DNA from: Selaginella moellendorffii
Lineage: Eukaryota > Plantae > Lycopodiophyta
Assembly (NCBI RefSeq): GCF_000143415.4
Contig: NW_003314311.1
Span: 354,181-418,180, forward strand
Direction: 5' to 3'
Length of the DNA: 64,000 bases
The notes under the pieces were generated by a model. That model worked only from the letters and a program-made list of their open reading frames with translations, ran no database searches and was not told where the DNA came from. Of this stretch, positions 9,401-40,199 are shown in pieces (the first letter of the stretch is position 1; every line of letters begins with the position of its first letter). The translations under genes were made by a program, and so were the position numbers.

Positions 9401-11341
9401 GTACGCCAAACTTGTTGTGCTCCTTGTGAAGGTAAGAGTTGAAGAATCTTAACCATGGACTGTCTCAAACAATATTGGCTCATGCAGTTTTATGCGGCGG
9501 AATCAACAGCAAATAAAGTCGGCCTTCTTAACAGAGTTCGTGATTGATGTGTTATTCCCAGCTGCTGCTCCTTATGCTTGGTATTTGTATCAGGTTTTGA
9601 ACGTGACTGTGCGCGTGATTCAAAAGGACGCTGACGAGAAGAAAACTTCGTTTCAGCCGCGTCCTTACTTCCGCTTGTTTCTAACATGGCTCATGGATTT
9701 TAATGCGCCAGACCCATCATTGGATTCTAGCGTTTATCAGGTACGTGCTTTTGGTCCACTTCAATTGATTTTATGGATTGGAGCAGATTCTTCTTTCCTT
9801 CACCAATGCCCTCACGATGTTGCAACCCCTGAACACGCCGGGATGGAGGTGTGGTATATAATACCTCTGTGGTTTGTTTAATTTGCTGTCTCTCTTGCAG
9901 CTTTGTGTGGTTGGAGTTGATTAGTCATCGTACCTTTATGCCGAAGCAACTTTTAGTTCAGCAACCGAAAGGCTGGCCGAATTTTCAACGCCTCCTTGTA
10001 TCGCTTTTCAGATTTATGGACCCCTACTTGAGAAGTGCGGAACTCAGTGACCCGGTAAGCTTGGACCACGATGTCTAGCACCCAGACTCATTTGTCGGTT
10101 TAAACTTTTACAGATCAGGCTGCTGTACAAAGGCACTTTACGCGTGTTGCTTGTGCTCCTCCACGACTTCCCAGAGTTCCTCTGCGATTATCATTTCAGC
10201 TTCTGCGACGTCATTCCCCCGAGCTGTATTCAAATGCGTAATCTCATACTGAGCGCATTCCCACGAAATATGCGACTGCCAGATCCATTTACTCCAAACT
10301 TGAAGGTATTCCGTGCATTGTTGTTGACGTCTTTGTGACAATGGTATTTGCGCAGGTCGATTTGTTGCCGGAAATAAGCCATCCTCCTCGCATACTGTCT
10401 GATGTGGAAGCTGCCTTGAAAAGCAAGCAACTCAAGGGTGACGTTGACGAGTATTTGAAGGTGTGTGAGCTTGTTTCGTCAGAGTGCACAATATAACGTG
10501 CTCTTCATTTGCAGACGCGCCTGTCACCACCCTTGTTTCTTGTCGATTTGAAGCAGCGGCTGCTATTGTCACAGCACGAATCCGGATTGAGTGGAACGCG
10601 GTACAACGTCCCTCTGATAAACTCGCTGGTGCTCTATGTGGGAATGCAGGTATGCGAATGCTACTTACTGCTGTGACGAGGCATTACGCCATTCTTTTTG
10701 CAGGCAATCCAACAGCTACAGGCAAAGACCGCCCCGCAAATCGGTGTCCCGACCGCGCCTATCACGCACAGCGCTCCCATGGACATATTCCAGAAGCTGA
10801 TTGTAGAGCTTGATACCGAGGGCCGCTACTTGTTCCTCAACGCCATCGCCAACCAGCTCCGCTATCCAAACAACCATACGCATTACTTCTCGTGCGTGTT
10901 GCTCTACTTGTTCGCCGAAGCCAGCCAGGTAAGCTTTCCTTTTGTGCTCTTCTATGTAGGCTCTAGCTCAATCCTTGCGCTTTGCTTCAAAGCAGGAGAT
11001 CATCCAAGAGCAAATCACGAGAGTTTTGCTGGAAAGGCTCATCGTCAACCGTCCTCATCCGTGGGGTCTGCTCATCACTTTCATCGAGCTAATCAAGGTA
11101 TGGGGGAGATCGTTGTCCCTCCTTTCTTCTTTCTCCTTTTCGTTAGAAATATCTCTCACCACGCTCCCTTTATCTCGCGCAGAATCCCCGCTACAACTTT
11201 TGGAACCACGCATTCGTGCGATGCGCTCCGGAGATCGACAGGCTGTTTGAATCGGTCGCGAGATCTTGCATGGGACCACCGGCGAAGCCGACGGACGAGG
11301 AGATCAACGCGAGCTTGAGCGCCGAGGCGATCAAAGGCTAA
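3430..11341 (+). CDS. NOT1: CCR4-NOT scaffold subunit NOT1, about 40 short introns
   Basis: Motifs across exons: [110 protein letters not shown]. Last exon [29 protein letters not shown]...KG* (TAA 11339-11341). The start codon is inferred. Confidence 0.95.
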
Positions 11342-12033
11342 ACAAACACGCGTGAAGAAACCAAAAAGAAAAAAAGAGGAAGAACAAAAACTAGGAAAAA
11401 AAGGAAAGAACGATCGAAGAGAGGAGTGTAAGTAACTCGGCCTCGTTCTTTTTGGTTTGTTTTTTTGCTCTCCCCATTTTCCCTTGTTTTTGTGTACAGC
11501 GCGATGTATCATAGAAATTTTTTTTTCCCCCTATCAACAAAATTTCCGTACAGTTCTCGTGTCATAAACGGCCATGCCTGGCGGGTGGACCACACCCGTC
11601 CGTACGGTGGGATGGGCGGCCATGAGGCGCCAAACAAGCCTTTGTTTGTACTTCCGGCCGGCCAATGAGAAACGCGCGCTATACGCGACCTGCCCCTTTC
11701 TGGGGAGCAGTGACGGAAGAATCAATGTCTCTTCCCGACAAGCCCCTCCCCTCCAACCGCAACTTCTACCGACAAGGGTAACCAGTGGTAAAAACAACGA
11801 CCGTATTACCGCCACTGATATTTTACCAACGAGATTTTTGTTTTCTACTTTTCTCCTTTTACCCCGCCGTCAGTGTGACACTAGAAACCCACTGTAAAGG
11901 TGCTGCGAGGGCAGCTCCACATTTGGCTGATATCTTCGTATCATATTTCCATTCTCTTCTCTCTTTTTCTCTCCTCTTTTTGGAGAGAACGTTATCTCTC
12001 TCTCCATTCCACTCTACTTCCTCTCCAATTCCC

Positions 12034-12881
12034 ATGGGATGCAAGCGGCGGAGGATGCAATCGCGCGAATCTTTGCAGAGCACGGTGGTGGAGGAGAAAT
12101 CCAGAGGCTCGGTGGTGGTGGTGGCGGCGGAGGAGGAGCGGAGCAATGGCGGTGAGGAGGCGGAGGAGTCGGGGTGGACGACTTACTTGGATCAGCAGCC
12201 ATTGTCATTGTCTCCTCGAGTCCAAGAACCACAAGCTCGAAGGCCGCGAAAGAGATCGCTCGCTCGCCAGGATTCCACGCTCTCGGTGCTCTCAGACGCC
12301 TCCTCGGGGCCAGTCACGGATCATCGATCGCAAGAACAAGTAAGAGCAAGTTACTTTTTTTTTTCCTCGTTTTTCTGGCATTTATTTGCTTCATCACAGG
12401 CTGGAGAAAACATACTCAAGTCATTATTTAATGAAGACAACGAATCAGAGATTGACAATGTAAGCTATTCCTTTGTGGTTTCAAGATGGAAGAACCATTG
12501 TTTTATCTCGTTTGGTCCTCACTTCCATTTCTTTCGTTTTTTTCGTGTCTCAAAAAAACTTTAGGGAGCTTTCGAGGCCATTGAAAGTCAACTTTGTGTT
12601 CTTCGGCGATTGATACCAGATGGAAACAAGGTAGACGAGATCAAAAAAAAATCTCACAGCCAAAAAATCTCTCTTGTTTAGTTTCACGACGAAGAAATGT
12701 TGGACAAAGCGATCGAATATGTACATTTCCTGCAGAGGAAAATCCAGGTAAACAAATCAATTGCAAACCTTTACTAAAGATTTGTTCACTCGTCTCGTAG
12801 ATATTCGAATCTAAATGGCAACGCAATTTACAAGAGCGAGGCTTGTGTTTGATCCCAGTCTCAATGCTAAAGCTCGTTTGA
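12034..12881 (+). CDS. VUP1 (vascular-related unknown protein)/SOFL-motif protein carrying a basic-less HLH; 5 exons (12034-12339, 12400-12459, 12565-12630, 12682-12747, 12801-12881)
   Basis: All introns are phase-0 GT-AG. Exon 1 has EESGWTTYLD and SVLSDASSGP. Exons 3-4 read QLCVLRRLIPDGNK-FHDEEMLDKAIEYVHFLQRKIQ. The last exon ends NLQERGLCLIPVSMLKLV*. Confidence 0.8.
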
Positions 12882-12971
12882 TTCGTGCCAAAGCCCCCAA
12901 TCAGAATTTTGGATTTGCTGCCACGACAGTAGCGTGCACAATTAGAAAATATGATTTGATATTTACATACA

Positions 12972-14784
12972 TTAGAAAATTTGAGGGAGGAGGCTGGTTC
13001 TGCCATCCGCAAATGATCGAAAGTTTGCAAACTTGACCACTGCTCGGCACAGGGGGCAAGTTCTCTCTCTTTCAAACCTGTAACATCAAACAAAAGAGCC
13101 TCAGTTCTGTCACATAACGATTCAAACGAGCAAGAAAAAAACAAAAGCCCAGCCCTTACCATTCCGAAACGCAGTCCTCGCAAAATATATGCTTGCACCG
13201 GAGAGATATCGGGGAATGCATCTTCTCCTGGCAAATCGCACACATGTCCCCGGCTGCAAGGACCTGCCGATCAAAGAAAACAAAAAAGATACCACGCGTG
13301 AAGGCCTTTTTCCAGAGTGTCGTTCGTAGAAGATACAAAAGACAAACCTCATCCGAACTGGCAGCGCTCCCGTATTGTACTTCGCAACGAGTGACAAGAC
13401 CCACTGCCCCGATAAACTCTCGTACCTGGAACCACGCACGAGCCTTCAGCCGACGAAAGAGACAATCCCAAATCTCAAGTCATTTTACCTTCGAGAACAC
13501 TGAAGTTAACTTGAAAGTGAGGTATAGACCCGTTGTCAGCGAGGAGAACACGTTGCCGTACTCTTTGTTGAGAAAGAACCGGTACCAAACTGGTCCGGGT
13601 ATCAAAGCTCGGACCAGGAGCAAAAGATACTCCACCGCTGTTAGGAGTTGGCCCTGGAAGAATTGACAGACCTTGAGATTAGAAAAGGTCGAAAAAAAAA
13701 AAAAGCTGCATGGAAGTGGGATAGCTATCCAACCTGTTTGCGAAAATGACGCCCCCTGGTGCTCTTACATGTCAAAAGAAGCACGCACTTGACAGCCATT
13801 CCCGCCTGCCGCACCATTACATCTGCGAGCGGAGGGAGGACAGTGAGAAAAGAAAGAAATCTAAGCCAGCTCGAAACATACCATTCACCACGATTGTGAA
13901 AATGGCCTCCCAAAACTTTGGAATCTTCCGCGGCGGAAGCAGCAGCAATGGCTTCCAAATGGCCTCGCTAGTATACCACGAATACACTAGAACTATATGA
14001 CATACCAACACGATGCCCACAGCCGCTGTCATAAGTTTCTTCCGTTCACCCTGTGCAACAAAGAAGAAAAACGAAAATGAAAAGCCATTAGGCTCCGATT
14101 GCGAGGCAAGATATCAATCTCTTGTACCTTCAGTGCTGTTTGCCTGCGAAGAACAACATTCGCTCTGATCATCACGGCAGTGAGACCAACCGTGACCGCT
14201 ATACCTTCCAGATGTTGACGAATGAAAACGAAGAGCAAAAGGACCGTAAAAGGCAATACGTTTTCCAACCATCTCGCAAGTGGCTGGAAGTCATATCTTT
14301 GCGTAGTGGTAGTCGTCGCAGCGGGCGCCTCCCTGGAACTAGGATCACCACCGGCAACCTCTCCACCAACGTTGAATCGTGGAGAACCTCCCAGCTCCTC
14401 ATCACCACCACCTATCGCTAACGAAGTACTCGAGCCATTCTCTCCACTCAATCCTCTAGAAGAGGAAGAAGAAGAGGAAGAGCTCGGCGCTATTCTAATC
14501 TCCTCGTCCTCGCCGATAATTCTAATCGCTACCTCGCCGCTGCCACCACCACCCCCACCGCCGACTAATCTATCGCTGCTGCCACTACTGCGGACTAAGC
14601 TCCCGGATTCTAGCTGCGAGGAGGAGTGAGACCTGCCAGGGATCAATCCGGAGACCTCGAGCACGGTCGACAGCGATCGCGGGAAGAGGTTGAGGTTGAA
14701 GAGGAATTGCGCGCCATAGCTGCTGGCGCCGCTGGCGCTGGCCACGGCGCTGCTGCTCCGGTGAGCGTCCATACCTAGATCCAT
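12972..14784 (-). CDS. RING-finger and transmembrane domain protein (RNFT1/2-like E3 ligase), multi-exon
   Basis: Ser/Gly-rich N-terminus; TM region ([21 protein letters not shown]; [12 protein letters not shown]); C3HC4 [32 protein letters not shown]|[11 protein letters not shown]; ends [11 protein letters not shown]. The start Met is approximate. Confidence 0.9.
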
Positions 14785-22158: not shown

Positions 22159-25100
22159 ATGGCGCTTGCAAGCGGAGGAATGGCGGCTTTTCAAGCACTT
22201 GGGCACGAACGATTCGTCAAGCCAATGCGAGCCAAGCGAGGTATGATCATATATCACAGCGGGAAGCTTTCCCAATGATTGTGAATAGGAAGAAGAGTGT
22301 GGACGAATGTTTCCAAGCTTGACACTTTGCAGCCGGGCTGGGAAGAAGATAAGTTCTCCAAGTACTCGGGCTATATTTCTGATGTGTCCAACGACGAGAC
22401 CGAGTTTAAAGAGTATGATCCAGATCAAATCTCGAGAGCTTTCAAGAATCGCCCTCTTCTTTTGATGCGTCGATTGCTGCAAATCTCTTTCAAAGTTGGA
22501 GGCTGGCTTGGAATTCGGTACTTTGATTCGTTACTTGGCCGGTCTGATGCTCTCTTCAAGGTATTGCTTTCTTTTCTTCTTTTTTATCGATTTGTTTTTT
22601 TATAATGTTTAAAACTACTTTTTATTTTCTTAGAAACGCGCTGCTGAGTTTCGGGAGGCACTAGTAGAGCTTGGGCCGGTAAGCTTTCGTTTTTTCCTCT
22701 ATATGCCATTTGTAACGTTACTTAAACTCTCAGGCTTTTGTAAAGATCGCACAAGCAGTGTCTTCACGTCCAGTAAGCTTCTCAAAGCTCAAAAACTCTC
22801 ACTAAGTCATCGTTGTCAAAACTTACAGCTCTCGCTTTTTACTTTTTATTTTTATTTTTTTTCCGTTTTGGTCTGTTTTTGTTTTTGTTTTTCTGTTTTC
22901 TCTTTTCATGAGGAGGTCGTCAGGATTTAATTCCACCAGCGTACATCGCCGAGCTTTCTCTCCTTCAAGACCAAATCGCACCATTCTCCACCAAAGCCGC
23001 TTTGAGCATCATCGAGTCGGAGCTTGGTGTTCCAGTTGATGTCTTGTTCTCGGAAATCACTCCCGCGCCTGTTGCAGCAGCATCCCTTGGCCAGGCAAGA
23101 AGATATACTTTTACTACATCTTATTTTCTCTTCCGCGTGGTTTTAAACGTTTTACTCTGGAAAAAACTCGCAGGTTTATCAAGCTCGACTTCGACCAAGT
23201 GGTGACACTGTTGCTGTCAAGGTGCAAAGGCCAGGGGTGAAAGCAACCATATCTTTGGACATTTATATACTTAGAATTCTGGCTGGCTATGCTAGAATTG
23301 TTGGAAGATTTAACACAGATTTGCAGGTACTTGATAGTATTGTGATTCTTGTCTTGATCCCGTTCTTCGTTTTCTTGCCTTGCAGGCTGTTGTAGACGAA
23401 TGGGCCAGTAGTCTCTTTAGAGTGAGTTCATTGCATTGTTTCACGCTTTACTTGCTTTTTTTTGTGTGTTTTTTTCGAAGGAAATGGACTATGAAGCTGA
23501 AGCACGAAATGGAGAGAGATTCAGGTGAATTCTCCCTTGAATTTTTCTTTTCGAACTTCCGTGTAACTTTTGTGTGTTGGCAGGCGTTTGTTTGGAGATA
23601 TCCCCGATCTTACAATCCCGAAGATGTACAAGGAACTCTCCAGCCAGCGAGTGTTGATCATGGAATGGGTTGAGGTATGCTAACGCTTAAAGTTTATATC
23701 GTTAGCTATTGTTTTGGTGCCTGTGTAGGGACAGAAGTTATCAGAAGCCAAAGATCTTCGACTCGTAGAGGTAGAAAGCTTTTTGTTTTAGAGCTTTCTT
23801 ATGACTCAGGTTTTGGCACAGATTGGAACGTATTGTTCATTGTCACAAATTTTAGAAACAGGTTTTTACCACGCTGATCCTCATCCGGGCAACCTTTTGT
23901 GTACGACTGATGGTAAACTAGCTTATATTGGTACGTACTTTCATTCACATTTACTCGGAAAAATTCTTTCATCTGTGTATTTTTTCGCTAGGCAGACTTT
24001 GGGATGATGGGTGAAATCAAGCAAAATTTTAGAGATGCTATAGTTGAGGCCTCTTTGCACCTTGTAAATCGGGAGTTTGATGCACTGGCAGGAGATATCG
24101 TTAATCTCGGGTATGTTTAGAAAGTAATTACCTGGCAAAAACCAACTTAAGTGTTCGTGTTTCGTGTTTAGATTTCTTCCTCCCACAGCTCCATCAGCGG
24201 AAGTGAGCCGTGCACTTACAGGTGAGTCACGTTTCTTTTTTTTTTTCAGGATATTTCTTTTCAGTTTTTATTTTCTTANNNNNNNNNNNNNNNNNNNNNN
24301 NNNNNNNNNNNNNNNNNNNNNNNNNNNNNNNNNNNNNNNNNNNNNNNNNNNNNNNNNNNNNNNNNNNNNNNNNNNNNNNNNNNNNNNNNNNNNNNNNNNN
24401 NNNNNNNNNNNNNNNNNNNNNNNNNNNNNNNNNNNNNNNNNTCAGGATACCATCATACTTTTCTCTCGTGATTCGAAGGCAAGGAAAACTACATTGAGAA
24501 TGATTTTTATCTTTGCTTTTTCCAGTTTAACGGTGTTGGAAGGAATAGCCATTACCATCGATCCAAACTACAAGGTTTTGGGACGCTCTTACCCTTGGAT
24601 AGCTAGGAAAGTTTTGACTGATGATTCGCCAACGCTTAGATCAACTCTTTACAATCTGTTATACAAGGTAGGAACAATCAAACGCATTCATTCAATCATA
24701 ATATGAGCTGGTTTTTCTCCTCGCAGGATGGTACATTTCAAATCGATCGTCTAGAATCTCTAATACTTGAGGTGCGTTAATGAGAGCATTTTGATTCTGT
24801 TTTGGTTACTCTTACCAAGTGATGGTTTACATAGTCTTCAAAAGCCACTGCAAACTGGTCACTAGATCAAGCTACTACCGAGGCACTCCAGAATCGATTG
24901 TATACTTTTATACTTAGCGACCAGGTATTGTCAAAGCTTCTTGGGCTTTTCTTGAGATCTTCATATTGCAGGGTGAATACGTGAAAGGTGTCCTTCTCGA
25001 CGAAGTTGTGAAGGTAAAAAGTAGTCTAAAAACAAGAAAGCTGTTTCACTCGGTTTTGCAGGGAATAGATGCTCTAAATCGTTCCACACTTGAGAGATTG

Positions 25101-25535: not shown

Positions 25536-26299
25536 ATGGGATAAGAACTTCTATAAAGACTGCTGGAAAAGCTGGTAGCTTGCAAAGAACCTCAGAAAGA
25601 AGGCGAAGAGTGGAGGATTATCTTGCCTCTACTGCTGAGCTCGTTGTCTATTTTCCGCGCTGATAAACGAGTACTATCGGCGCAGTGATGTCTTTGTGCA
25701 CAGTCATTAAGGTACGAGATTGAAACCTGTGAGTTCGTTTCCGATTGAAACTTTGAGCTGTGAATTCTCAGTGAGGAGCTAGAAACTTTCACAAGCAAGC
25801 TTTCCGTGCTTGGCTGGTATGCTCGAGAATTCCAAGCTTGTGGAGCACTATGCAGGGACGCATCCTTTCTCGTTGGCCTTGCTCAACAAAAGCTGTATGA
25901 ATGGCAGAGGGCGGAGGTATGCTTTACTGGAGTGGCAAACAGCTGTTGAAACTTCTAGACTCGGCTCCGCTAGCAAACTTGAACGTGCTTATCACACGGA
26001 TTATGGACATGGGCTTGCTGGATAGGCGCTTGATCACAGAGTTACCCAAATATTGCTTCGTAAGTGCTATGATGCATGAGCATGTTGAGGCATGTGTTGA
26101 GGTTGGAGATGGTAGTACTCTATACAAGATTAATTTGGTGGATTGACTTAAGTTTTCAATTTTTCAGTGATGGCAACATAAGTGTCTAAATTGGCTGCCA
26201 AAGGAATTTTAGATGCAAAGGTTTTAATGGTTAATGGTTTTGTATTATGCAGGTATCTGATGGTGGAATGGACTTAAAGAATCTTTTACTGCAAATAAC

Positions 26300-28860
26300 A
26301 AACCACTAATATCTATTATAGATGAGTTTGAAGTTGTTTTTCATTTATGTTTTATCTCTCACTATTAAAAATGCTTTCATGGAACTTCAATAAAGAAGAA
26401 TGACATTTAGAGATTTCATTGAGAAACTTACTCATTTAATAAGCCATGTTCTAGATTAAAATGGCCTTCAAAGTGAAGGCAATACTTGCATCATTAAGAG
26501 TTATTTGATGTGGTTTGTTGATTTAATAAAAATAAGCATAAATCTCATAAGCATTTGAAGAGTCTTTTAGTCAAAGATTTGTTATAACAATCATTATGAA
26601 CACGAGGATGGAAATAACCATCACAAGTTGAAATCTATAATGACTACTTTAAAAATAAAAGGGTTGAAGAAGTAGATATTCTTTGTAAAGAACTAAAAGT
26701 AAAATTATTATTATTATGGCTAGTTTGGACATTATAAATTTATTTATCTATAGGTGAAGAACAAACAACAAAGCAAGAAAAATGGTTAATCTTTTAATGA
26801 CAGTAAGTTAAATATTAAGTTGTAGAATTTGTGACATGAGGATGATGAGAAGGATTGATTTGGTTAAAGGAAGCAATTGTAAATTGCTGATGGTCAATTA
26901 AATTATGTGTGGAATAAGGTAGAAGTTGAGAACACTTGTGCATTAATTTTAATGTTAGAGGGTGTATTCTATGGCAATCCAATACAAATTTTACTACACA
27001 ATTAAAGTGATTACAACTTTGTTTTCATAAAGTTTGTGAAGAGCACAACTTAATAACATGAGTTCTTCTATATATAATGGAAGGTGTAGCTACTTCTACC
27101 CAATATTTTGATACTTATATAAAAGGGCTAGAAGTGTTAACTAGCAAAACCACATTTGTGAAGATTTTTTATTTCACAAAAATTCATTGTGTAAAGCTTA
27201 TTCTTGGGATGTTATAAATAAATGTGGATTCAAAAATAAATTGAAATATTAAACACATTTTGCTAGAGTACAATGGCATTAAAGATGTGTGGTCTAGAGA
27301 GGGAGTTCAGCCCCCAATTATTATACTCTCTATTATATCTTTGAAACAAGCTTTTAGTAATGAATAGATATTTTTAAATTACTTATTGTTTATTTAGAAT
27401 AATAAAAGTGTAAGTAATTAAAAAAACAACTCAAAAGACAATTTACAAGGGTTCAAATAGAGGGAAGAGGCCTATGAATAAAAGTGCACTCCTTTTTTAA
27501 TCAGTTAAATTTTTTAAATATAATTTTAGATTTGAATAATAGTTTAGATGTGATTTTCTGGGAAGGCCAAATTTATAAACTTACATTTGATATTAAAGGG
27601 GTTTTAAGTTTGACTCTATTGGTTGATTAAGAAAATCATACCATATGTTGAGATTAACATTTGACAACCTAGTTTACTTTGGCTAAGTTCAACCTATAGA
27701 GGGTGGGGTGTCAAAAGAGCAGTTATAGTTCTTAGTTTTTATTCATAAGAGCTTAAATTTGTAAGGAAGTATAGTAAATTGTAAGCAATTAAAGAGAACA
27801 GCTTAAGCAATGATTCATAAAGGTTTAAATATAAAAAAAAGGCCAATAAATAAGAGTCCACCCCCTTTTCTATTTGATTAAGGGTTTTTGGATATTTAGG
27901 GTTTATGCATAGGTTGGATAACCTAATAAATTTAAATTCAGAAGTTTATACAAAGCATATGGAAGGGAGAAGTAATAATACGGGATGTACTCAAGGAATT
28001 TATTGATATCTTTCCATCCAAATTTATAGATTTCCTTTATTATGAGATATAAGATTATGCTAAAGCTAGAAATAAAGCTAATTTACCAATATCTTTTTTT
28101 ATTGAGCTAATGTGCTTTAAAAAAAAAGATGGTTAAAGATAAAATATTGATGCCATATATGGATGATATTTTAGACAAGTTTAATGAAGCTTGAGTTTTT
28201 TACCAAAATTGATTTGAAGAGTAAATATTATCAAATTGCAATAGATTTTATATATATATATNNNNNNNNNNNNNNNNNNNNNNNNNNNNNNNNNNNNNNN
28301 NNNNNNNNNNNNNNNNNNNNNNNNNNNNNNNNNNNNNNNNNNNNNNNNNNNNNNNNNNNNNGCTGTTTGGACATTATCTATATAAGTTTGTAGAGATTTT
28401 TCTACATATATTCTGGTTATAAGTAAGAATATAAAGGAGCATAAAGTGCATTAATGCATGGTTCTTTTATTATTATGTGACAACAAACTTTATGCAAAGA
28501 AGAGCAAATGTAAATTTGCAAAGTTAAATGTAAAGTATCTATACCATATTGTAATATCCATGGATGTTAAGACAAATCTAAAGAGGGTGGCTATAGTGGA
28601 AAATTAGCCTACACAAGCTTCAATAGCCAGTTATATAATTTCTTTAGTATAATTAGTTGTTACTAACATTTCTTGTGTAAATTTGCAAAGGTGGTTACTG
28701 CTTTGACACAATTGTTACATAAGAATATGTCATTCAAGTAGAAGAAGGTACAAGAGTATAGTTTTATAGCGTTAAAATGATTGTTGAGTGAGTGTAGCAT
28801 ATATAATTTGGTAAGTAGAAATATAATCATGGTAGAAGAGTAAAAAGCTAATGGGTATTT
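26300..28860 (+). mobile_element. Highly decayed Ty3/Gypsy gag-pol remnant
   Basis: Broken RT motifs: FFTKIDLKSKYYQI (28196-28240), KLYAKKSKCKFA...V.YL, HFLCKFAKVVTALTQLL. Many stops; very AT-rich. Confidence 0.7.
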
Positions 28861-31739
28861 AGAGGATTTGAACATAATTCAGATCAAATGTTTATAGTTT
28901 TAGTGGCTGATCATACTGCACAAACTCTAATTGATACATTATATACATATATTTAACTAGGTAAGTTTTATTTCTATTATTATTATTAACTAATAATTAA
29001 TTAATATTTTAGGAAAAATTATTTATAATGATTTTTGGGCTGGTTATGATTCAGAGTGGTTGAATCAATTGAATTTCATTATACATTTAACCACTCCCAA
29101 AATTTTGTTCATTCTATGACTAAAGTTCATACAAATTGTATTGAATCACCATAGAATACAGTGAAAAGATCCCTTCTGGTACAACAAAAGGATTATACAG
29201 CTTTTCCTTTCAAGAATTTAATTAGCAAAAAATATATATTGAAAAAAAACTGTATTTAATATTCTATGTAGTTATATTAAGCTACATAATCATAATACTG
29301 TTATAGTAGAATAAAAAGTATACTTTATTTTTTACTTTTAAATACTTAAAAATAATTGAAAAATAATATACTAGAATTTATTGTAATGAGGTGGCATGCT
29401 TATGTAAGCAATGAGAGTCCAAATAAGCCAATGGGGCCCACCCTAAATAAAGGGGGTTGCATTCTACCTAGTTCAAGAATACAAGTGGTTCTTTGATCCC
29501 CATGGGAGCTTCCAATGGTTTGCAAGATTTGTGCTCAATCTTTCACAACATGGCAGTCAAGTAGGAAATCTGTGGAGCTTGAGCACGTATGGGATGTGCA
29601 CAGATCACTGTACGGGCTCATTTGTCCTATTTGTGGAGCAATGATCTAGCAAGAAGCTCATTCTGCTAGAGGTGATCCACAGAACTTTGCCATTGGTGGA
29701 CACTGGGACAGTTACAGCACTCACAAAAGCTCCTATCAATCGACAGGATTGATAAACATATGGATTCTCAATGCTGGCTCAGAGGATCAAATCCTGCTTA
29801 CAGTTTTGTTTCATCCCATGAGTTTTCCAGGTAACAAGTTTCAAGTTTGAAATAAATCTTTTGTGACCATGTTCATATTTCAGGTTATGTTCAGGGGGGG
29901 GGGGGGGATTTTGCAAAGAGTATTGAAGCATTTTTTGTGTTTAAGCGAGCGTTAGGGGAGGTGCCCCTCCTTCCCTCAACAAATGGTGAACCCGACCTGA
30001 CACACAGCACTTTCTGAGGCGTCATTTCTCTTTTTCTTTTGGCTGCAGACTTTGGGAAGAAATTCCTTGTTCATCTGATAGCGGTTTTATTTGATCTTTA
30101 GCGTGTTGGATAGGTTTGGAGCTCCTCTTTCCAGCAAGGTATGGTGCTTATCAAGCCATGCAGTATCTGAGGAGATACAACATTTCTTGGCTTGGTTGAA
30201 TGAACATTTTGGGGTTTTCACTTTCTTGTTTAGATCCTCGGCCAAATTTCTCAAGGTAGTGCATTTAGGCTTGTACATCTGGCCTAGATCTACGAGTAGT
30301 GGTGATTTTTGGTGCTAGATTTGGCCAAATTGGTGGCATGCAAAAGGATTTTCTTCTCCAACTAGATGGGGTCATCTTTGTAGCAGGAATTCATGCTCCT
30401 CCGGGCTTTGTTTTGGATGCTATTTGTTTTTAGAGGTGCTCTTGCTCCTAGGCTTTCCAAAAACACCAATGGTGCCTTAGTATTGATCTACATCAGTGAC
30501 ATACACATGTTTTTCCACAATAATAATGTTCTGGGCTACCTCTTCTTGAATTTTAGGGAATATTGAGGTAGCTTCTTCCCAAATTCCTGCGATAGAGGGT
30601 AGACGGGGCTAAACCCTTTCCAACAAGCCCACCAACAGTCAAAATAGGGAAGCATTGAGGCCAAAGGACTCATTTTTTTTTTTGGGGCTAAACTTTGTTG
30701 GGAGTTCCTTGGGAATGAAGCAATCTTCAAGGAACAGGAGTTGGTATAAGAACAAGAACAGGAGGAGTAGGAACAAGAGTTGGCATAGGAATAGGGACAA
30801 TAGGAACATATGCAAGGATAAGAGTTGGTGTTAGAGCAAGTGCAAAAGTAGGTGGTTACCAATTAAAGGTTACAAGTCTCTAGTTACTTGTTACTAGTTA
30901 CTGGTTACCGGTTACTGACTACTCTGAGTGGTCAACACTTACTCTACAGACCAATGATTATTAATGGCCACTTTTTCAGAGTGCCACCACCATCTTGGCA
31001 CTCCACCATATCATTTCATCTTTCATCATTTCCACACTTACAACCTTTGGGCAACACATCCCCTCTTTTACCTCTCTTTCTTTCTCAATTTCGGCCAATC
31101 TTTGGAGCATACTGAAAGTCATCAAGAGGCTGCATTTGCATATTACACTTTCCTGAGCCGAAATCCAGGTACGGGTTAAGTTCTTTAGGTGCTCATTCTT
31201 TTTCCTCTATTTTCTTCTTCTTCTCACACTTTTCTTCAACTTCAAGGTCCAGTTTGACTATAGGGTTTCCCACCAGGTTTTCCTCCCTGTCTCTAAACTT
31301 CACACCTACCTCTTTTCTTTCTTTTCTACTTTGTTTTCTAGAGTTTCTACTATTTCATGCGCCCTTGGCATTAGTAGTAGAGGTACACTCTANNNNNNNN
31401 NNNNNNNNNNNNNNNNNNNNNNNNNNNNNNNNNNNNNNNNNNNNNNNNNNNNNNNNNNNNNNNNNNNNNNNNNNNNNNNNNNNNNNNNNNNNGCAAAGAG
31501 CATTGAAGCATGTGTTTGAGTGAGCATTGGGGGAGGTGCCCCTCCTTCCCCTAACAATGGGAGAAAGACAAGGTAGAGGGCAATTGTTTTCGTTGTCATA
31601 GGGCTCAACATCAAGGCAAAGATTGTCTTGAAGGGGTCAATAAATGCTAAAGTGACTATGGTGGAATCTATAGGCAATGATAAGCAATGATGCAAATGGA
31701 TATTGTTATTGGGGCCATATTGCTTTAAGTTCAACATTT

Positions 31740-34450
31740 TCTTGCATTCATGTCCCATAAGTTTGATGTTACATAATGGAATTGGCCTACTCGAGACAAG
31801 GAGTTGTATGTTGTGATTGCTGTTGTGAAGGAATAATGACATTATCTATATAGATCAGACTTTCATATGGATTCAGACCATCAAGTCTCTTTAGTATTTC
31901 AATCGACAAAAGGATTTTTGAGGCTACCTTACTCGTTAGCAAGAGTTCCTATAGGAAATGTTTATTAAGATACATTATAAGCATAGAAGTGACAATAAGG
32001 TGGTTGATGCATTATCCAGGATGGTAAATTCTATTTTGTTCTTGAAGCTATCTAGTGATCTCTTAGATGAGCTTAAAGAGTTTGATGACTTCAACTCCTT
32101 TATCATTGATGTTCGCACAAAGGTTTTCTTGAGGGACACCTCTACAGGTTTGAAGGATGACAAGTTTGCATCATTCGAGATACGAGATGGAATTCTAGTG
32201 AAGAAGAGACTTGTGGTGGTTCCTCGTGTTGACAAATTCATCAAACGAATTTTGGTTTAGTGTCATGATGTGCCAAGTGCTGGGCATCCAGGGGTACTGA
32301 AAACATATATGTTGGTGAAGAGGCATTTCTTTTGGCCTGGGATGAAGTTAAATGTTGAGAAGTATATACGTGGTTGTTTGACTTGTTAGGTAGCCAAAGT
32401 TGATCATCAAAAGCTCACTAGCCTCTATCATCTTTTATATATACATGAGAATAAATAAGATAGCATCTCAATGGACTTTATCATTGGTTTGCCTAAGACC
32501 TTTCAAAGAAATGATGCTATTTGGGTTATTATGAATTATTTGACGAAGATGGCTCACTTCTTTTCAATGAAGATGATAATAAAAGCTTTTGAACTTGCTT
32601 AGTTGTTTGTAGACTGATTATTCAATCTTTATGGTTTGCCAAGTGATATTGTGAGTGATCATGATCCCAAGTTCACATCCAAGTTTTGGCAAACAGTCTT
32701 TGAAAAGTTAGAGACTAAGTTGAGTATGAGTAATGGTGAGCATCCATAATTAGATGAGCAAACAGAGCATATGAATCAACTATTAGAAGATATGCTGAGG
32801 TCTTTTGTGGGAAACTTGACTTGACAGGTAGTATAGGAGAAGTACTTGCATTTGCTTCAATTTGCTCACAATAGCACTCATCAATTAGCTATTGGCATGT
32901 CTCCCTTTATGGCGATAAGCCTACGTCTCTTGTGAGTTTGAATTTGGCTTTGGTTCAGGTACCTCATACTTGTGATTTCTCTAGACTATGCCTCAGGTTG
33001 GTCGGCCATGCCTGACCTATCCACTATCCCTACTATACATTTGGAACCCCCCATAGCCCCCCCCCCTTGAGGAACACACGCTTTGGGCTTTCACCCCAAG
33101 CCTCCCTTAGTATCAGGAGTTAGTCTTTGGGACAAGCTCGAAATTTACTAAATATGGAATGGAGCTAGATTGTGAATTTGGACATGGGACGAACACTATT
33201 GTGTTCAGGACAATCTCTACATTCCATAGATATGCCAAATGAGCAAATCTGGACACTTTCCATAAATAGCATTTGGGACCAAATTGAAACTAACACAAAA
33301 GGCATGATAGCGAGGGTGTTTGGCAGACACGGTAAGCTATCATCTAGCGATATTAAGGGACCAATCTTAATATCGCGGGGGGTTCTTAATACTAGCAAGT
33401 GCAAGCCAATGACACAAGTTTCTCAAACCAGGCCGAGTATGCTCAGCAAGAAACACATAGGGTTCCTACCTTATGTTTATCCAATCTAAGTGCATGTTCA
33501 TTGACCAGTTTCTCAACTAGCTCAAGTGGGAACTGATAACGGGTCCAGCAATACCGACCTCCTGCCATCATAGCAGTAAGGTAAGAGTGTCTGTAAGGAC
33601 TAGCCGATAGGTAACTTTCGATACCCGAAGTCACATTTGCGACAGTAGTGCTAAGTTGTCTCCATGGTATTGTGGGATTTGGACAATTTTACAGTGTGTG
33701 GGGGATCTTGTATACACTTTGAATTTGCTAGTTAGTTCAAAGATTCATCCAATGTTCCATGTGATGAAGCTTAAAGCGTGTTTGCACTTTAGTGATGTGG
33801 ATCAGTCCATCATCCAAGTCTTAGAGATTGATGCAAAGATGGCTGGTCTGACCAATATTCTTGCTTAAAGATTGGTGAAAACATGCTAGAAGACAATTAG
33901 GGAGTTGTTAGTTCAGTGAAATGGTTATTTTATGAATGAAGCTAAATGGGAAATTGAGGATGACATGAAGAGAGTGTTTCTGAGTTTTGGTTATGACTTG
34001 AATAATATTCCTCTCGGAAGGGGAGAATTAAGTTCTATAGCCATATTACCATATGATATGATCCCTTTATTCTATTGTTATTCTTTTCTTTCCATGACTA
34101 TATTGTCATGCAAGAAAGCCATATTGCTTTCTTTCTTTCCTGGCCGTTTGTTATAACATTGGTGTTGCCGTTTGCACATTTTTTCTCCATGGCCATATTG
34201 CTTTGGAATCCCTTCATGTGAAGCTTGTTTAGCTTCTTGAAGCTGCTGTCTATGGCTGGGTCATGAGGGAGGGGAGAATGACATGAACCATAGGAATATT
34301 CCAGAAATATTTTATGGCTTATGGGATTTAAGGCTGTAACACCTTAAGGGTTGGGAAGTTGGCTTAGGGTTCACTCTCTTGTTCTTTTCATTCATAGTGC
34401 TCTACAAGGTGTTGCCCTTAAGGTCTGAAATGAAGCATGTGAATAGAGAG
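31740..34450 (+). mobile_element. Decayed Ty3/Gypsy (chromovirus-like) RNaseH-integrase-chromodomain region, PPT and start of 3' LTR
   Basis: NKVVDALSR; HDVPSAGHPG..KT...FFWPGM...GCLTC zinc finger; ISMDFIIGLP; IVSDHDPKFTSKFW; KLSPWYCG; IHPMFHV; chromo-like LLVQ.NGY...AKWE. PPT gagggaggggagaa at 34265-34278, then TG. Confidence 0.85.
32981..33644 (-). mobile_element. Truncated family-A LTR in reverse orientation within the decayed integrase
   Basis: Reverse complement starts TGTCGCAAATGTGACTTCGGGTATCGAAAG, matching LTR starts at 43185, 50017 and 56170. Confidence 0.85.
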
Positions 34451-35781
34451 TTGCTATATCTAGTAGTGAAACTCTTAGAAACTAGAAAACTTAGATATGG
34501 CAAGAAAATTTAACATGAGCTGCTAGTGCCATGGCTAATGTGCTAGGCTATGGCCCTAGCACATGCTTTGGCACAGCTAGAAAACTAGAGTCTTTGAAGA
34601 ACCTAGCTCCAATTACTACAACTATATTGCTTCCTAGATGAATTCTTTAGAATGGAAGTATTTTTTGTTGGTGTGGTATAACTTAAGCTTGTCACTTAGT
34701 TTCTTATAAGGAAATTTACTCTAAAATAATGATAATTTCTTTAAAATGAGGCATTCTGCCTATATTAGCAACACTATTGTTGATTTATATTATGCATGTT
34801 ATATTTTAGCTTGTAGTGCATAAAAGATCCCAACTAAGCAACCTTGGTTGTTGAGAGCATGGAAACTTACCCTTCTCTAAGACTTAAACATTTACTAACT
34901 AATGGATATTAATTCTTCTTAATTGCATGGTTTGTACATATCAGTGCCATGTATGAATTCTTCAAGCACCAACTCATCAATTAGTCACCATGTAATGCCA
35001 AGATGGATAATATGTATTACTAGCAAGCCTAGCAAGGCCCAATTCCACCACTACCATGCTTCTAGGGCTTCTGGCACTATTTCAAGAGCAACATCCTCTT
35101 GAGCAATATCCCTTTGCAATTGTTTAAGATCAAGTGCTTGGATCTCAGCCACAATCTCTTCGAAGGCACCAATTTCAATTGGTTTGTATCTCCACCACCC
35201 TAAAATCTTAGGCATCTTGCCCAAATTCTTTCACATAAAGGATCAATCTCTATGCATGCCCTTATTGATACTTGTAAATCCATAACCAAGAAAACAATAA
35301 TTGCTCACAACAAAATCTTCTGATGCTTTGCAATTGTTTGTATATACCAAACTCTATGGATCATAGTTAAATTGAATCACTCAAAAAGGAGAAGATGACA
35401 TGGCTGTACATGTGGTGTGGCATATCCCATGTACATATTATAATCCACACAATCACGAAACACAATCTAAATGTGTTTGCGTGCATAATAATTTTATGGG
35501 CAATTGAAAGAAAAACTGCACATATGGCATCACATAAGAGAATAGCTTTAAATAGAAGAAAAAACTAAATGTTAATAGAATAAACAATTAAGAATAAATG
35601 AGTAAAGACACTACTTAACATCTCCACCAATGTCATATTTTTCCTTTATAATACTGGATGATTTATTTGTAAATTAATATGTTAATATTAGATAGTATCT
35701 CATATACAAAATGGAATTTTTGATTTGATTGAATACACCAACCAAGAGTCTAAAATCTAATTAGACTGACCTTTTTTACAA

Positions 35782-36684
35782 ATGAATTATAAAAAAATTA
35801 ATTTAGTTACATATTTATATTTTTCTATAGCTTATTCTCAAAAAATATATCATTATGAGGATTATGGAGATAATGGAGCAATTCCAATGCATATAAATAT
35901 GGATAATTTAGCTTCAATGTTTATTACTTTTTTAAGACACTCGTTGCCTTCTGGTAGAAATACACAAGTGGATTCTCTATTTTATACATCTTATATAAGT
36001 TCAGACTTAAAAATAAATATGCTATTTGTTATACTATCTGCTAGTATAAATTGTCCAATAAACAATGGTATACATGAAATTAATAATGATGCTGCTAGAC
36101 TTTTATTATCAAGAGTTGGTAGAGAAGTTTATTTATCTTTTCGAAATGCTAGAGCATCACATTTCATAAGTATTATTGTTCAGAATGATATTGGTATTTT
36201 TCTAGTTTTATATCAAATACAAGACTATATTTCTAGAATAACACCTCATTATATTATTCATGCACATTCAATTCCATATAATTTTTGTAACTTTCTAAAA
36301 AATAGATTATTTAGTGGATATAAAGGTTTATATATAGCCACACTTAATCCTGGTGAATTCTTAGCACATTTTTATAAAACATATGTATTTTTAGTACAAC
36401 ATGATTGTAATACTGTTTTTTATTATGTAAATACAGTTTTATGGGATACTAAAACTTATAAAGTAAGTTTTGATTGTAAATTAAGATTACAAGAAGATGG
36501 AAATCTTGTACTTTATTCAGCATTTGATTTACAATCGCTATATGCAACTGGAACTTATTGTAGAAAATATAATTGTGTGAAACCATCAATGCTTATTCTA
36601 CAATTAAATTGTGATTTAGTTTTATACCAAGATGGAAACCCTTCTATACAAATGTGGTCAACTGAAACAATATGTTATAATTAA
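35782..36684 (+). CDS. Intronless AT-rich 300-aa protein with a C-terminal bulb-type (GNA/B-type) mannose-binding lectin domain
   Basis: TLNPGEFL...VQHDCNTVFY...LWDTKT...CKLRLQEDGNLVLY...LQLNCDLVLY...MWSTET (three QxDxNxVxY-type subdomains, one canonical). Possible N-terminal signal peptide. Confidence 0.75.
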   Translation: MNYKKINLVTYLYFSIAYSQKIYHYEDYGDNGAIPMHINMDNLASMFITFLRHSLPSGRNTQVDSLFYTSYISSDLKINMLFVILSASINCPINNGIHEINNDAARLLLSRVGREVYLSFRNARASHFISIIVQNDIGIFLVLYQIQDYISRITPHYIIHAHSIPYNFCNFLKNRLFSGYKGLYIATLNPGEFLAHFYKTYVFLVQHDCNTVFYYVNTVLWDTKTYKVSFDCKLRLQEDGNLVLYSAFDLQSLYATGTYCRKYNCVKPSMLILQLNCDLVLYQDGNPSIQMWSTETICYN

Positions 36685-39600: not shown

Positions 39601-40199
39601 CTTATAATCAGGTTCCAACCTACGACTGAATTTTGGTCTAGATTGTTTAAACTGACTGATCTTGCATTGAGCCACGTGGTCTCTGCTTTGAAAGAACAGC
39701 ATTGCACGCAAGCATGCCAAAGTCTCATGGATGTATGGAGAGATTTGATCCACCAGGAAGTTGTACTCCATCTGTATGCCATCAATGAATCCTCTATGAA
39801 TGGAGTCCAGAATCCCTAGAAAAGTTCTTGCCCTTCTGGGGCAAGGGTTTTATACAAGGAAGATGGGGAATATTCTAAGGACCAGAATATTCCCTCTCTC
39901 TCTCACTCTCTCGGTGGCCACACCCTAACACCATTAGTTCAAACGAAGCTTCTTACCCTCATTGCCATCTTCATGCTTCGAGCCATGACAGAACAATAGC
40001 TGTTTCTTCCCCAAATATGAAGCATTGGTGGATTGGTCATCATGTTGACTACTTTGTAGATTATCTTGTTGATCAGAGTTGACCAAGTTGATTGACGGTT
40101 TGGGCGAAAAGATTTGACCATTAGGAGATGGAGACTCGGTCAGCTCGGCAGTGGCATGGAGGCCAAGGTGAGGGATGGTGGAGCTATGACAGACTCACA

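What the first reader, a model, noticed from the sequence alone, without database searches (positions are those of the whole stretch)
12034..12881. VUP1-family protein that still contains a (basic-less) HLH domain: possible missing link between VUP1/SOFL and bHLH factors
Seen: the spliced protein has EESGWTTYLD and SxxSDASS near the N-terminus and LxxRGLCLIPVSML at the C-terminus. Between them, two 66-nt phase-0 exons encode a clear helix-loop-helix (QLCVLRRLIPDGNK / EMLDKAIEYVHFLQRKIQ). The HLH is preceded by an acidic stretch (EDNESEIDNGAFEAIE) instead of a basic region. Known: the terminal motifs are those of angiosperm VUP1-type proteins, which as I recall have no HLH. The L.xRGLCLVP tail is also typical of subfamily X bHLHs (bHLH110/112/123 type). 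Inference: VUP1-type proteins may derive from a bHLH that lost its domain, and this may be an intermediate acting as a non-DNA-binding HLH inhibitor. The ORF track does not show the HLH because it is split over small exons.
Basis: partly seen in the sequence, partly recalled or inferred. Interest (0 to 1): 0.85.

Follow-up and report, generated by a model that had tools for sequence, protein, structure and literature searches.

The report
SOFL-motif protein with basic-less HLH
This expressed Selaginella gene encodes a helix-loop-helix protein that has lost its DNA-binding basic region but carries the two signature motifs of the SOFL growth regulators. Its relatives show that flowering-plant SOFL5/6 proteins are truncated descendants of this older protein type.

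Summary
The five-exon, all-phase-0, GT-AG gene at 12034-12881 (+) encodes 192 aa. It has SOFL-A (ESGWTTYL), SOFL-B (SVLSDASSGP), an acidic stretch where a bHLH has its basic region, a confidently folded HLH on two 66-nt exons, and an LQERGLCLIPVS tail.

- **Expression:** RNA-derived contigs from four studies show the exon joints.
- **HLH homology:** it is homologous to canonical bHLH domains and shares all three of their intron positions.
- **Distribution:** this is not a Selaginella oddity. Diphasiastrum, Ginkgo, Cryptomeria and Taxus have the same architecture, and the Diphasiastrum and Cryptomeria genes, which I mapped, have the same exon plan.
- **Link to SOFLs:** angiosperm SOFL5/6 align to this family through helix 1, keep the intron positions, and stop early in the helix-2 exon. 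They are therefore truncated descendants. This contradicts the published view that SOFLs arose in angiosperms.
- **Link to VUP1:** only indirect. Pfam VUP_C hits the gymnosperm orthologues, but I could not obtain a VUP1 sequence.
- **Subfamily X origin:** not shown. The nearest HLHs found are HEC/IND-like.
- **Likely function (inferred, untested):** a non-DNA-binding HLH partner or inhibitor of bHLH factors.

The scan found this before on another piece of the same genome (s1-434236), with the same conclusion.

The parts
12034..12339 (+). Exon 1 (aa 1-102). Disordered N-terminal region with KRRR and RRPRKRS basic patches and both SOFL motifs.
   Evidence: The ATG and GT donor were read directly. 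The 12339>12400 joint appears in 4 runs. pLDDT is below 50.
12166..12189 (+). SOFL-A motif ESGWTTYL (aa 45-52).
   Evidence: It fits the published SGWTxY definition. It is invariant in the four-sequence lycophyte-type alignment and nearly invariant in the 13-member family alignment. It aligns to angiosperm SOFL5/6 at E 8.5e-15.
12283..12312 (+). SOFL-B motif SVLSDASSGP (aa 84-93).
   Evidence: It fits the published SxxSDA definition. The D and P residues needed for SOFL overexpression phenotypes are present. It was aligned by hhalign.
12340..12399 (+). Intron 1 (60 nt, phase 0, in frame and without a stop).
   Evidence: GT..AG. It is skipped in 4 runs, and one unspliced contig was also seen.
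12400..12459 (+). Exon 2 (aa 103-122). A linker ending in the acidic stretch that sits where canonical bHLHs have the first half of the basic region.
   Evidence: A low-confidence helix is predicted at aa 101-113.
12460..12564 (+). Intron 2 (105 nt). It lies at the canonical bHLH 'basic-region' intron position.
   Evidence: GT..AG. The joint appears in runs X2 and X5. The Camellia RSL-like bHLH has an intron at the same position.
12565..12630 (+). Exon 3 (66 nt, aa 123-144). GAFEA replaces the KRRER-type basic residues, followed by helix 1 and the start of the loop (…LIPDGNK).
   Evidence: It has the same length, phase and boundaries as the canonical exon KRRERINERLKILQNLVPNGTK and the Diphasiastrum exon. 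AF2 predicts a helix at aa 124-138 with pLDDT of about 88-93. Net charge of the 13 pre-helix residues is -5, against +2 to +4 in canonical bHLHs.
12631..12681 (+). Intron 3 (51 nt), at the canonical loop intron position.
   Evidence: GT..AG. The joint appears in 3 runs. The position is shared with the Cryptomeria, Diphasiastrum, Tasmannia SOFL5 and Camellia bHLH genes.
12682..12747 (+). Exon 4 (66 nt, aa 145-166). End of the loop and helix 2 (…EEMLDKAIEYVHFLQRKIQ).
   Evidence: It has the same length and phase as the canonical exon VDISTMLEEAVQYVKFLQLQIK. AF2 predicts a helix at aa 147-172 with pLDDT of about 90. Pfam HLH matches profile positions 20-53.
12748..12800 (+). Intron 4 (53 nt), at the canonical intron position at the end of helix 2.
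   Evidence: GT..AG. The spliced joint was seen in one run only (X2). Contiguous contigs over it probably belong to the overlapping antisense neighbour.
12801..12881 (+). Exon 5 (aa 167-192 plus the stop codon). Extension of helix 2 and the C-terminal tail.
12828..12869 (+). Tail motif LQERGLCLIPVSML (aa 176-189).
   Evidence: GLC[LIV][LIVM]P is conserved in nearly all full-length family members; one has GLCLVS. The same motif is described for bHLH family X. Pfam VUP_C hits the gymnosperm orthologues.

Best explanation
**What it is.** The locus is a real, spliced and expressed Selaginella moellendorffii gene for a 192-aa protein with two parts.
- The N-terminal part is intrinsically disordered and carries the SOFL-A (SGWTxY) and SOFL-B (SxxSDASSGP) linear motifs.
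- The C-terminal part is a helix-loop-helix dimerisation domain followed by an RGLCLIPVS tail.

**Origin of the HLH.** It descends from a canonical plant bHLH gene and has the same three intron positions. The basic, DNA-contacting region has been replaced by acidic residues.

**Most likely function (inferred, not shown).** The protein cannot bind an E-box itself. It most likely works by dimerising with DNA-binding bHLH factors, either forming inactive heterodimers or bringing the SOFL motifs to them. This is the Id / PRE / IBH1 / SACL mode of action.

**Family (shown).** It belongs to a conserved vascular-plant family seen in lycophytes and gymnosperms. Flowering-plant SOFL5/6 genes are C-terminally truncated descendants that kept the SOFL motifs, the DDTASSP block (which the Selaginella protein itself lacks), a helix-1 relic and the intron positions, but lost helix 2 and the tail.
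For: - **Gene model and splicing:**
- **Purifying selection between the two haplotype copies:** dN/dS 0.19.
- **HLH homology:**
  - phmmer hits canonical bHLHs at E 1.5e-6 to 1e-4 against a library of 1.8 billion proteins.
  - The family profile against the PDB gives MYC2 6.8e-7, Max 1.4e-5, MITF 1.6e-5 and Id1 1.4e-3, and nearly all 42 hits at E<=1 are bHLH/HLH chains.
  - hhalign against a moss bHLH group gives E 8.5e-11 with 53% identity.
  - AF2 models two helices with pLDDT of about 90. The top Foldseek matches are Max and MYC2 at rmsd 1.4-1.9 A.
- **Shared 66+66-nt exon plan with a canonical bHLH:**
- **No basic region in any member:** net charge is -2 to -5, against +2 to +4 in canonical bHLHs.
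- **Same architecture in Diphasiastrum, Ginkgo, Cryptomeria and Taxus, with the same exon plan in the two genes I mapped (Cryptomeria, Diphasiastrum):**
- **Link to SOFL5/6:**
  - hhalign gives E 1.6e-27 over 161 columns, through helix 1.
  - The direct lycophyte-type profile against SOFL5/6 gives E 8.5e-15.
  - Tasmannia SOFL5 keeps the introns and ends 10 codons into the helix-2 exon, at VCREENKNKIW.
Against: - Pfam HLH is below its gathering score on every single member (13.5-18.5 bits against 20.7).
- Foldseek E-values are not significant.
- No dimerisation partner, localisation or phenotype is known, so the inhibitor mechanism rests only on the missing basic region and on analogy.
- Unspliced contigs over introns 1-3 show that some transcripts may not encode the HLH.
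- The runs are only guessed to be RNA, although their GT..AG joints argue that they are.
Confidence: 0.7

Rival explanations
1. **Adaptor rather than inhibitor.** The HLH is a docking module that recruits the SOFL-motif region, and whatever binds it, to bHLH complexes or homodimers on chromatin. The protein would then be a co-regulator, not a titrating dominant-negative.
For: - The SOFL-A and SOFL-B residues are the most conserved part of the family.
- Those residues are enough for overexpression phenotypes in angiosperm SOFLs that lack an HLH. The N-terminus therefore has an activity of its own.
Against: There is no direct evidence either way. Other plant basic-less HLHs (PRE, IBH1, AIF, SACL; established knowledge) act mainly by sequestration.
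Confidence: 0.2
2. **Ordinary DNA-binding bHLH.** The protein is a transcription factor of subfamily X, or HEC-like, whose basic region was merely missed by the gene model.
For: - The GLCLVP tail is typical of family X.
- UniProt labels the older gene model 'BHLH domain-containing'.
Against: - The exon immediately upstream is confirmed by RNA joints and encodes acidic residues.
- No family member in five genera has a basic region.
- The Pfam match starts at profile position 20.
Confidence: 0.04
3. **Artefact or decaying gene.** The model is a chimeric annotation of two genes, or a pseudogene drifting towards a SOFL-like truncation in Selaginella too.
For: - Unspliced contigs cover introns 1-3.
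- Retaining intron 2 would end the ORF at 12562-12564 and give a 176-aa SOFL-only product.
Against: - A single 505-nt contig joins exons 1-4.
- dN/dS is 0.19.
- The frame is intact in both haplotypes.
- Orthologues have the same five exons.
Confidence: 0.03

Closest known systems
SOFL family (SOB5, AtSOFL1-6; Tayengwa et al. 2018, PMC5873917)
   Same: - It has the SOFL-A SGWTxY and SOFL-B SxxSDA(SSGP) motifs in the same order near the N-terminus.
- Profile-profile homology is E 8.5e-15 directly and 1.6e-27 through the gymnosperm orthologues.
- Intron positions are shared with SOFL5.
- NCBI already names the Cryptomeria orthologue 'SOB FIVE-LIKE 6'.
   Different: - It has a complete HLH and a GLCLIPVS tail, which SOFLs lack.
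- It comes from a lycophyte, whereas the family was reported as angiosperm-only and absent from Selaginella.
- The Selaginella protein lacks the DDTASSP block.
VUP1 family (IPR039280; Pfam VUP_C PF27761; Linum TSS1)
   Same: - Pfam VUP_C is recorded on the gymnosperm orthologues P0004, P0007 and P0043.
- VUP1 overexpression gives brassinosteroid-deficient-like dwarfs, as overexpressed atypical HLH inhibitors do (my recollection of the VUP1 abstract and of the IBH1/AIF literature).
   Different: - No VUP_C hit is recorded for the Selaginella protein itself.
- I could not obtain an angiosperm VUP1 sequence. Whether VUP1 lacks or hides an HLH is therefore untested.
Non-DNA-binding HLH regulators (animal Id; plant PRE/KIDARI, IBH1/AIF, SACL, UPBEAT1)
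   Same: - It has an HLH dimerisation fold without a basic region.
- The family profile matches the Id1 HLH (E 1.4e-3).
   Different: - It has a long disordered N-terminus with SOFL motifs and the GLCLVP tail.
- It is not a member of the SAC51 or LHW Pfam families (12.5-17 bits against a cut-off of 28.5).
bHLH subfamily X (bHLH68/110/111/112/123 type)
   Same: - It has the C-terminal [RK]GLCLVP[IV]S motif soon after helix 2.
- Atlas clusters named bHLH68-like and bHLH112-like carry VUP_C. These are leads only, with scores of 0.75-0.79.
   Different: - Subfamily X proteins have a basic region and no SOFL motifs.
- No subfamily X sequences were available to compare the HLH itself.
HEC/IND-like (VIIIb) bHLHs and a moss bHLH group (Physcomitrium XP_024365173)
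   Same: - These are the best HLH sequence matches, with 46-54% identity over about 45-57 residues.
- The moss group also has a downstream KLCLVSIS tail.
   Different: - They have a full basic region (ARHRRE/KK).
- The moss gene is intronless.
- They have no SOFL motifs.

Membership tests
bHLH superfamily (Pfam PF00010) | HLH profile match above the gathering score | tested here: inconclusive
   Scores are 16-17.7 bits against a cut-off of 20.7, covering profile positions 20-53 only. 10 of 12 family members match at E<1, and none passes the cut-off.
bHLH superfamily (Pfam PF00010) | Significant sequence homology of the domain to canonical bHLH domains | tested here: met
   - phmmer gives E 1.5e-6 to 1e-4.
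- The profile against the PDB gives MYC2 6.8e-7.
- hhalign gives 8.5e-11.
bHLH superfamily (Pfam PF00010) | Basic DNA-contacting region (H/Q5, E/A9, R13; several K/R) directly before helix 1 | tested here: not met
   The window's protein has 0 K/R and 5 D/E in the 13 residues before helix 1. All 12 family members have a net charge of -2 to -5, against +2 to +4 in 11 canonical bHLHs.
bHLH superfamily (Pfam PF00010) | Two amphipathic helices joined by a loop | tested here: met
   AF2 predicts helices at aa 124-138 and 147-172 with pLDDT of about 90. rmsd is 1.4-1.9 A to MYC2 and Max.
bHLH superfamily (Pfam PF00010) | Conserved plant bHLH intron positions (two 66-nt phase-0 exons) | tested here: met
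   The boundaries are identical to those of a Camellia RSL-like bHLH gene. That this pattern is the commonest in plant bHLH genes is my recollection; I could not check it in a paper.
SOFL | SOFL-A motif SGWTxY | tested here: met
   ESGWTTYL at aa 45-52. The definition comes from PMC5873917.
SOFL | SOFL-B motif SxxSDA | tested here: met
   SVLSDASSGP at aa 84-93. The T, D and P residues shown by mutagenesis to be required are present.
SOFL | Profile homology to accepted SOFL proteins | tested here: met
   - The A1 profile retrieves SOFL5/6-named proteins at E 1e-15 to 1e-10.
- hhalign gives 8.5e-15 and 1.6e-27.
SOFL | Small protein with no conserved C-terminal domain; angiosperm-restricted (as published) | tested here: not met
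   It has an HLH and a tail, and the organism is a lycophyte.
VUP1 (Pfam VUP_C, IPR039280) | VUP_C domain match | tested here: inconclusive
   No precomputed Pfam hit is recorded on P0001 or P0002. VUP_C is recorded on the gymnosperm orthologues, marked 'faint' for P0007. The model is not in the local Pfam copy.
VUP1 (Pfam VUP_C, IPR039280) | Sequence homology to Arabidopsis VUP1-4, and absence of an HLH in them | not testable with these tools
   No VUP1 sequence was returned by any search. The VUP1 paper is not held.
bHLH subfamily X | C-terminal GLCLVP motif | tested here: met
   RGLCLIPVS at aa 178-186. The motif is described for family X in soybean and potato.
bHLH subfamily X | HLH domain groups with subfamily X in a phylogeny | not tested
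   No subfamily X sequences were available. The best hits are HEC/IND-like.
SAC51/SACL and LHW bHLH families | Pfam bHLH_SAC51 or bHLH_LHW match above the cut-off | tested here: not met
   Scores are 12.5-12.8 bits and 15-17 bits against a cut-off of 28.5.

The most novel reading that the evidence does not exclude
**Proposal.** The flowering-plant growth regulators of unknown biochemistry may all be remnants or disguised members of one vascular-plant family of basic-less HLH proteins. These regulators are the SOFLs (cytokinin), VUP1 (xylem and brassinosteroid/auxin response) and Linum TSS1 (style length in distyly).

**What this would imply.**
- The ancestral mode of action was dimerisation with bHLH factors.
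- The SOFL-A and SOFL-B motifs are an effector module that became autonomous when the HLH was truncated.
- VUP_C may still be a cryptic HLH plus tail that titrates growth-promoting bHLHs.
Probability: 0.35. Interest if true: 0.75.

Novelty: new variant of a known kind. Interest (0 to 1): 0.6.

Why it matters
- **Open question.** SOFL and VUP1 proteins have clear overexpression phenotypes (cytokinin content, dwarfism, repressed brassinosteroid and auxin response, xylem defects). A VUP1 homologue, TSS1, is the candidate style-length gene of the Linum distyly supergene. No biochemical mechanism or recognised domain is known for any of them.
- **Testable hypothesis.** The ancestral, still-extant form is a basic-less HLH protein. 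This suggests partnership with, or titration of, bHLH factors.
- **Correction to the literature.** The published view is that SOFLs arose in angiosperms and are absent from Selaginella. These results contradict it.
- **Evolutionary interest.** The family documents a transcription-factor domain decaying stepwise. The basic region went first, and helix 2 was lost later in SOFL5/6.
- **Limits.** The parts are already half-annotated in databases: UniProt 'BHLH domain-containing', NCBI 'SOB FIVE-LIKE 6', Pfam VUP_C. The functional claim is untested.

Tried and rejected
- **Single-sequence word-index searches.** These found only the two allelic gene models.
- **Obtaining VUP1.**
  - The paper (PMC3982757 / its DOI) is not held.
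  - The metagenome scan returned only SOFL5/6-type host loci with no GLCLVP tail downstream.
  - The Atlas search with the N-terminal part gave nothing usable.
  - The VUP1 half of the claim stays untested.
- **SAC51 or LHW membership.** I considered this because of weak Pfam hits and a precomputed label on the moss relative. I rejected it because all scores are below the cut-offs.
- **Foldseek.** The right fold ranks first, but E-values are above 0.4. I use this as supporting evidence only.
- **Intron comparison with the closest moss bHLH.** This was impossible because the gene is intronless.
- **Other sources not available.**
  - The PIF3-like hit is not on record.
  - The Toledo-Ortiz 2003 paper is not held.
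  - The Pires & Dolan supplements are not held.
- **Other checks.**
  - A second copy in the window was looked for and not found.
  - The by-sequence look-up of earlier findings was blank.
- **Literature searches.** Searches linking SOFL or VUP1 to HLH/bHLH found no paper making the connection.

Full report
**Organism and gene model**

The window is Selaginella moellendorffii. The nearest database proteins are LOC9632831 (P0001, 192 aa) and SELMODRAFT_408741 (P0002, 181 aa; UniRef name 'BHLH domain-containing').

The exons are 12034-12339, 12400-12459, 12565-12630, 12682-12747 and 12801-12881. The four introns are 60, 105, 51 and 53 nt, all GT..AG and all phase 0.

P0001 lies on scaffold GL377574.1 between the same neighbours, CNOT1 upstream and a RING-finger gene convergent downstream. 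It has the same five exons. The two copies differ at 4.1% of exon positions and 6.4% of intron positions. dS is 0.117, dN is 0.023 and dN/dS is 0.19, so the reading frame is under purifying selection. There is only one copy in the window.

**Expression and splicing**

I laid contigs from four public runs, from four different studies, on 11600-13400. The runs are only guessed to be RNA, but they carry GT..AG joints:
- 12339>12400 in all four runs.
- 12459>12565 in two runs. Two further runs show a one-base-shifted version that fits the other haplotype's 1-nt intron indel.
- 12630>12682 in three runs.
- 12747>12801 in one run.

A single 505-nt contig joins exons 1, 2, 3 and 4.

Unspliced contigs over introns 1, 2 and 3 were also seen. 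Contiguous high-depth contigs over 12741-12868 most likely belong to the 3' end of the convergent RING gene. That gene's spliced contigs reach 12789-12915.

**Is the HLH real?**

On single sequences Pfam HLH stays below its gathering score. It gives 16-17.7 bits against 20.7 and matches profile positions 20-53 only, that is, without the basic part. Stronger tests agree that the domain is a true HLH:
- phmmer of P0001 against 1.84 billion representatives gives canonical bHLHs (RSL-, PIF- and HEC-like, plus a moss group) at E 1.5e-6 to 1e-4.
- A profile of the family's C-terminal region against PDB sequences gives Arabidopsis MYC2 at 6.8e-7, Max at 1.4e-5, MITF at 1.6e-5 and Id1 at 1.4e-3. Nearly all 42 hits at E<=1 are bHLH/HLH chains.
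- hhalign against the moss bHLH group gives probability 97%, E 8.5e-11 and 53% identity over 47 columns.
- AlphaFold2 models helices at residues 124-138 and 147-172 with pLDDT of about 90, and a disordered N-terminus. The domain-only model has a mean pLDDT of 82.6.
- Foldseek ranks Max and MYC2 first (rmsd 1.4-1.9 A, TM about 0.6), but with non-significant E-values.

**Descent from a canonical bHLH gene**

In a Camellia RSL-like bHLH gene the domain is split into three parts: …YAR | a 66-nt exon KRRERINERLKILQNLVPNGTK | a 66-nt exon VDISTMLEEAVQYVKFLQLQIK | the rest.

Window exons 3 and 4 have the same lengths, phases and boundaries. They align without gaps, with 9 and 10 identities out of 22. 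The KRRER residues are replaced by GAFEA, and the preceding exon ends in ESEIDN.

The Diphasiastrum orthologue has the same 66+66-nt exons. The Cryptomeria orthologue has 57+66 nt at the same positions.

Across 12 family members the 13 residues in front of helix 1 carry 0-1 K/R and a net charge of -2 to -5. Eleven canonical bHLHs have 4-5 K/R and a net charge of +2 to +4. 'Basic-less HLH' is therefore a family character.

**The family**

The same architecture is found in several other vascular plants. It consists of SGWT, SDASSGP, often DTASSP, an acidic stretch, the HLH and a GLCLVP tail. It occurs in:
- Diphasiastrum complanatum (522 aa).
- Ginkgo (two genes).
- Cryptomeria, which NCBI names 'SOB FIVE-LIKE 6'.
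- Taxus.
- Several unnamed transcript contigs.

No bryophyte protein among the hits I retrieved carries the SGWT motif.

**Link to SOFLs**

The published definition of the family is SOFL-A SGWTxY plus SOFL-B SxxSDA. The same paper states that no SOFL exists in Selaginella or Physcomitrella and that the family arose in angiosperms (PMC5873917).

The Selaginella protein has both motifs, including the T, D and P residues whose mutation abolishes SOFL overexpression phenotypes. The evidence for homology is:
- A profile of lycophyte and gymnosperm members retrieves angiosperm proteins named SOFL5/SOFL6 at E 1e-15 to 1e-10.
- hhalign of a four-sequence profile (two lycophytes plus two unnamed contigs) against 39 SOFL5/6 proteins gives E 8.5e-15 over SOFL-A to SOFL-B.
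- The gymnosperm profile against the same SOFL5/6 set gives E 1.6e-27 over 161 columns. It runs on through the DTASSP block, the next exon and helix 1 up to the loop: SALQKHFGFLQSSLPGKP aligned with AVNKRLDFLQSILPEAP.

Gene structures agree with this:
- Tasmannia SOFL5 has introns after …SFPK, after the 28-aa exon 2 and in the loop (…KP | VCREE…), as Cryptomeria does. It then stops 10 codons into the helix-2 exon.
- Arabidopsis SOFL5 stops earlier still, inside the helix-1 exon.

The HLH-bearing form is found in both lycophytes and gymnosperms. Angiosperm SOFL5/6 keep a relic of it. The simplest reading is therefore loss by truncation in the angiosperm SOFL lineage. I did not analyse the intronless SOFLs (SOB5, SOFL1-4).

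**Link to VUP1**

I could not test this link directly.
- The VUP1 paper is not held.
- No search returned a VUP1 protein. The metagenome scan found only SOFL5/6-type loci.

Some indirect evidence exists:
- Precomputed Pfam annotation puts PF27761, named VUP_C, on the Ginkgo and Cryptomeria orthologues and one conifer-like orthologue. It is marked 'faint' for P0007.
- No such hit is recorded for the Selaginella protein.
- Atlas clusters named bHLH68-like, bHLH112-like and a 131-aa 'BHLH domain-containing' cluster carry VUP_C in 16-39% of their members. Their scores of 0.75-0.88 make them leads only.
- The literature describes GLCLVP as a family X motif.

The tail therefore plausibly ties VUPs, subfamily X and this family together. 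Whether VUP1 has lost the HLH or hides one is open.

By HLH sequence, the nearest canonical relatives I found are HEC/IND-like proteins and a moss group, not subfamily X. No subfamily X sequences were available to compare.

**Mechanism**

What is shown:
- The protein has an intact dimerisation fold.
- It has no basic region.
- It has conserved SOFL motifs in a disordered N-terminus.
- It is expressed and under constraint.

What is inferred: it dimerises with DNA-binding bHLHs and either inactivates them or brings the SOFL-motif region to them. This is how Id, PRE, IBH1/AIF and SACL proteins work (established knowledge). The partners are unknown.

**Novelty**

No paper in the held library connects SOFL or VUP1 with HLH/bHLH. 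Databases hold the pieces separately.

This scan already noted the same thing on another piece of this genome. A follow-up agent there reached the same conclusion (s1-434236). I reached mine from my own tests.

I rate it a new variant of known kinds (atypical HLH; SOFL), of moderate to good interest.

Noticed in passing
window 12340-12564: Unspliced contigs cover introns 1-3. Intron 1 is in frame and has no stop. Retaining intron 2 would end the ORF at 12562-12564, giving a 176-aa product with the SOFL motifs but no HLH. That would be a natural 'SOFL-like' isoform, if it is real and not pre-mRNA or DNA carry-over.
   Followed up: partly
window 12741-13400 (- strand): The convergent RING-finger gene has CT..AC introns at 13076-13157 and 13262-13345. 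Its highly covered transcript reaches back to about 12789, perhaps to 12741. Its 3' end therefore overlaps the last exon and intron 4 of the HLH gene in antisense.
   Followed up: partly
window 12916-12971 and 12922: Three runs show a 56-nt stretch replaced by CGG (ends TG..CA, so not an intron). Other contigs show a 4-nt ACGA insertion behind 12922. These look like haplotype indels in the shared 3' region.
   Followed up: no
window 10698-11318 (+): This is the C-terminal (Not1 domain) part of a CNOT1 gene, directly upstream. The other haplotype scaffold has the same gene order (L010).
   Followed up: partly
L004:3721-3923 (Tasmannia SOFL5); also P0104, P0092, P0138, P0081, P0110, P0120: Magnoliid and palm SOFL5 proteins still end in …KP|VCREE/CRDE…KIW. 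This is the first residues of the helix-2 exon of the gymnosperm HLH genes. Most eudicot SOFL5/6 have lost even that.
   Followed up: yes
L003:1001-2572 (Physcomitrium XP_024365173, P0035): This is an intronless moss bHLH with a full basic region. Its HLH is about 50% identical to the Selaginella one. It has its own conserved tail, LQQQLFKQKLCLVSISQCP, which resembles the GLCLVP motif. It is a possible canonical relative of the family.
   Followed up: partly
L012:501-1676 (Diphasiastrum P0034): The Diphasiastrum orthologue carries an extra N-terminal extension of about 230 aa before the SGWT motif, with no Pfam match.
   Followed up: no
window 24279-24441, 28262-28361, 31393-31492; 26000-44000: There are three runs of N (assembly gaps) inside a long AT-rich stretch (GC 0.28-0.40), unlike the gene-bearing flanks.
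   Followed up: no
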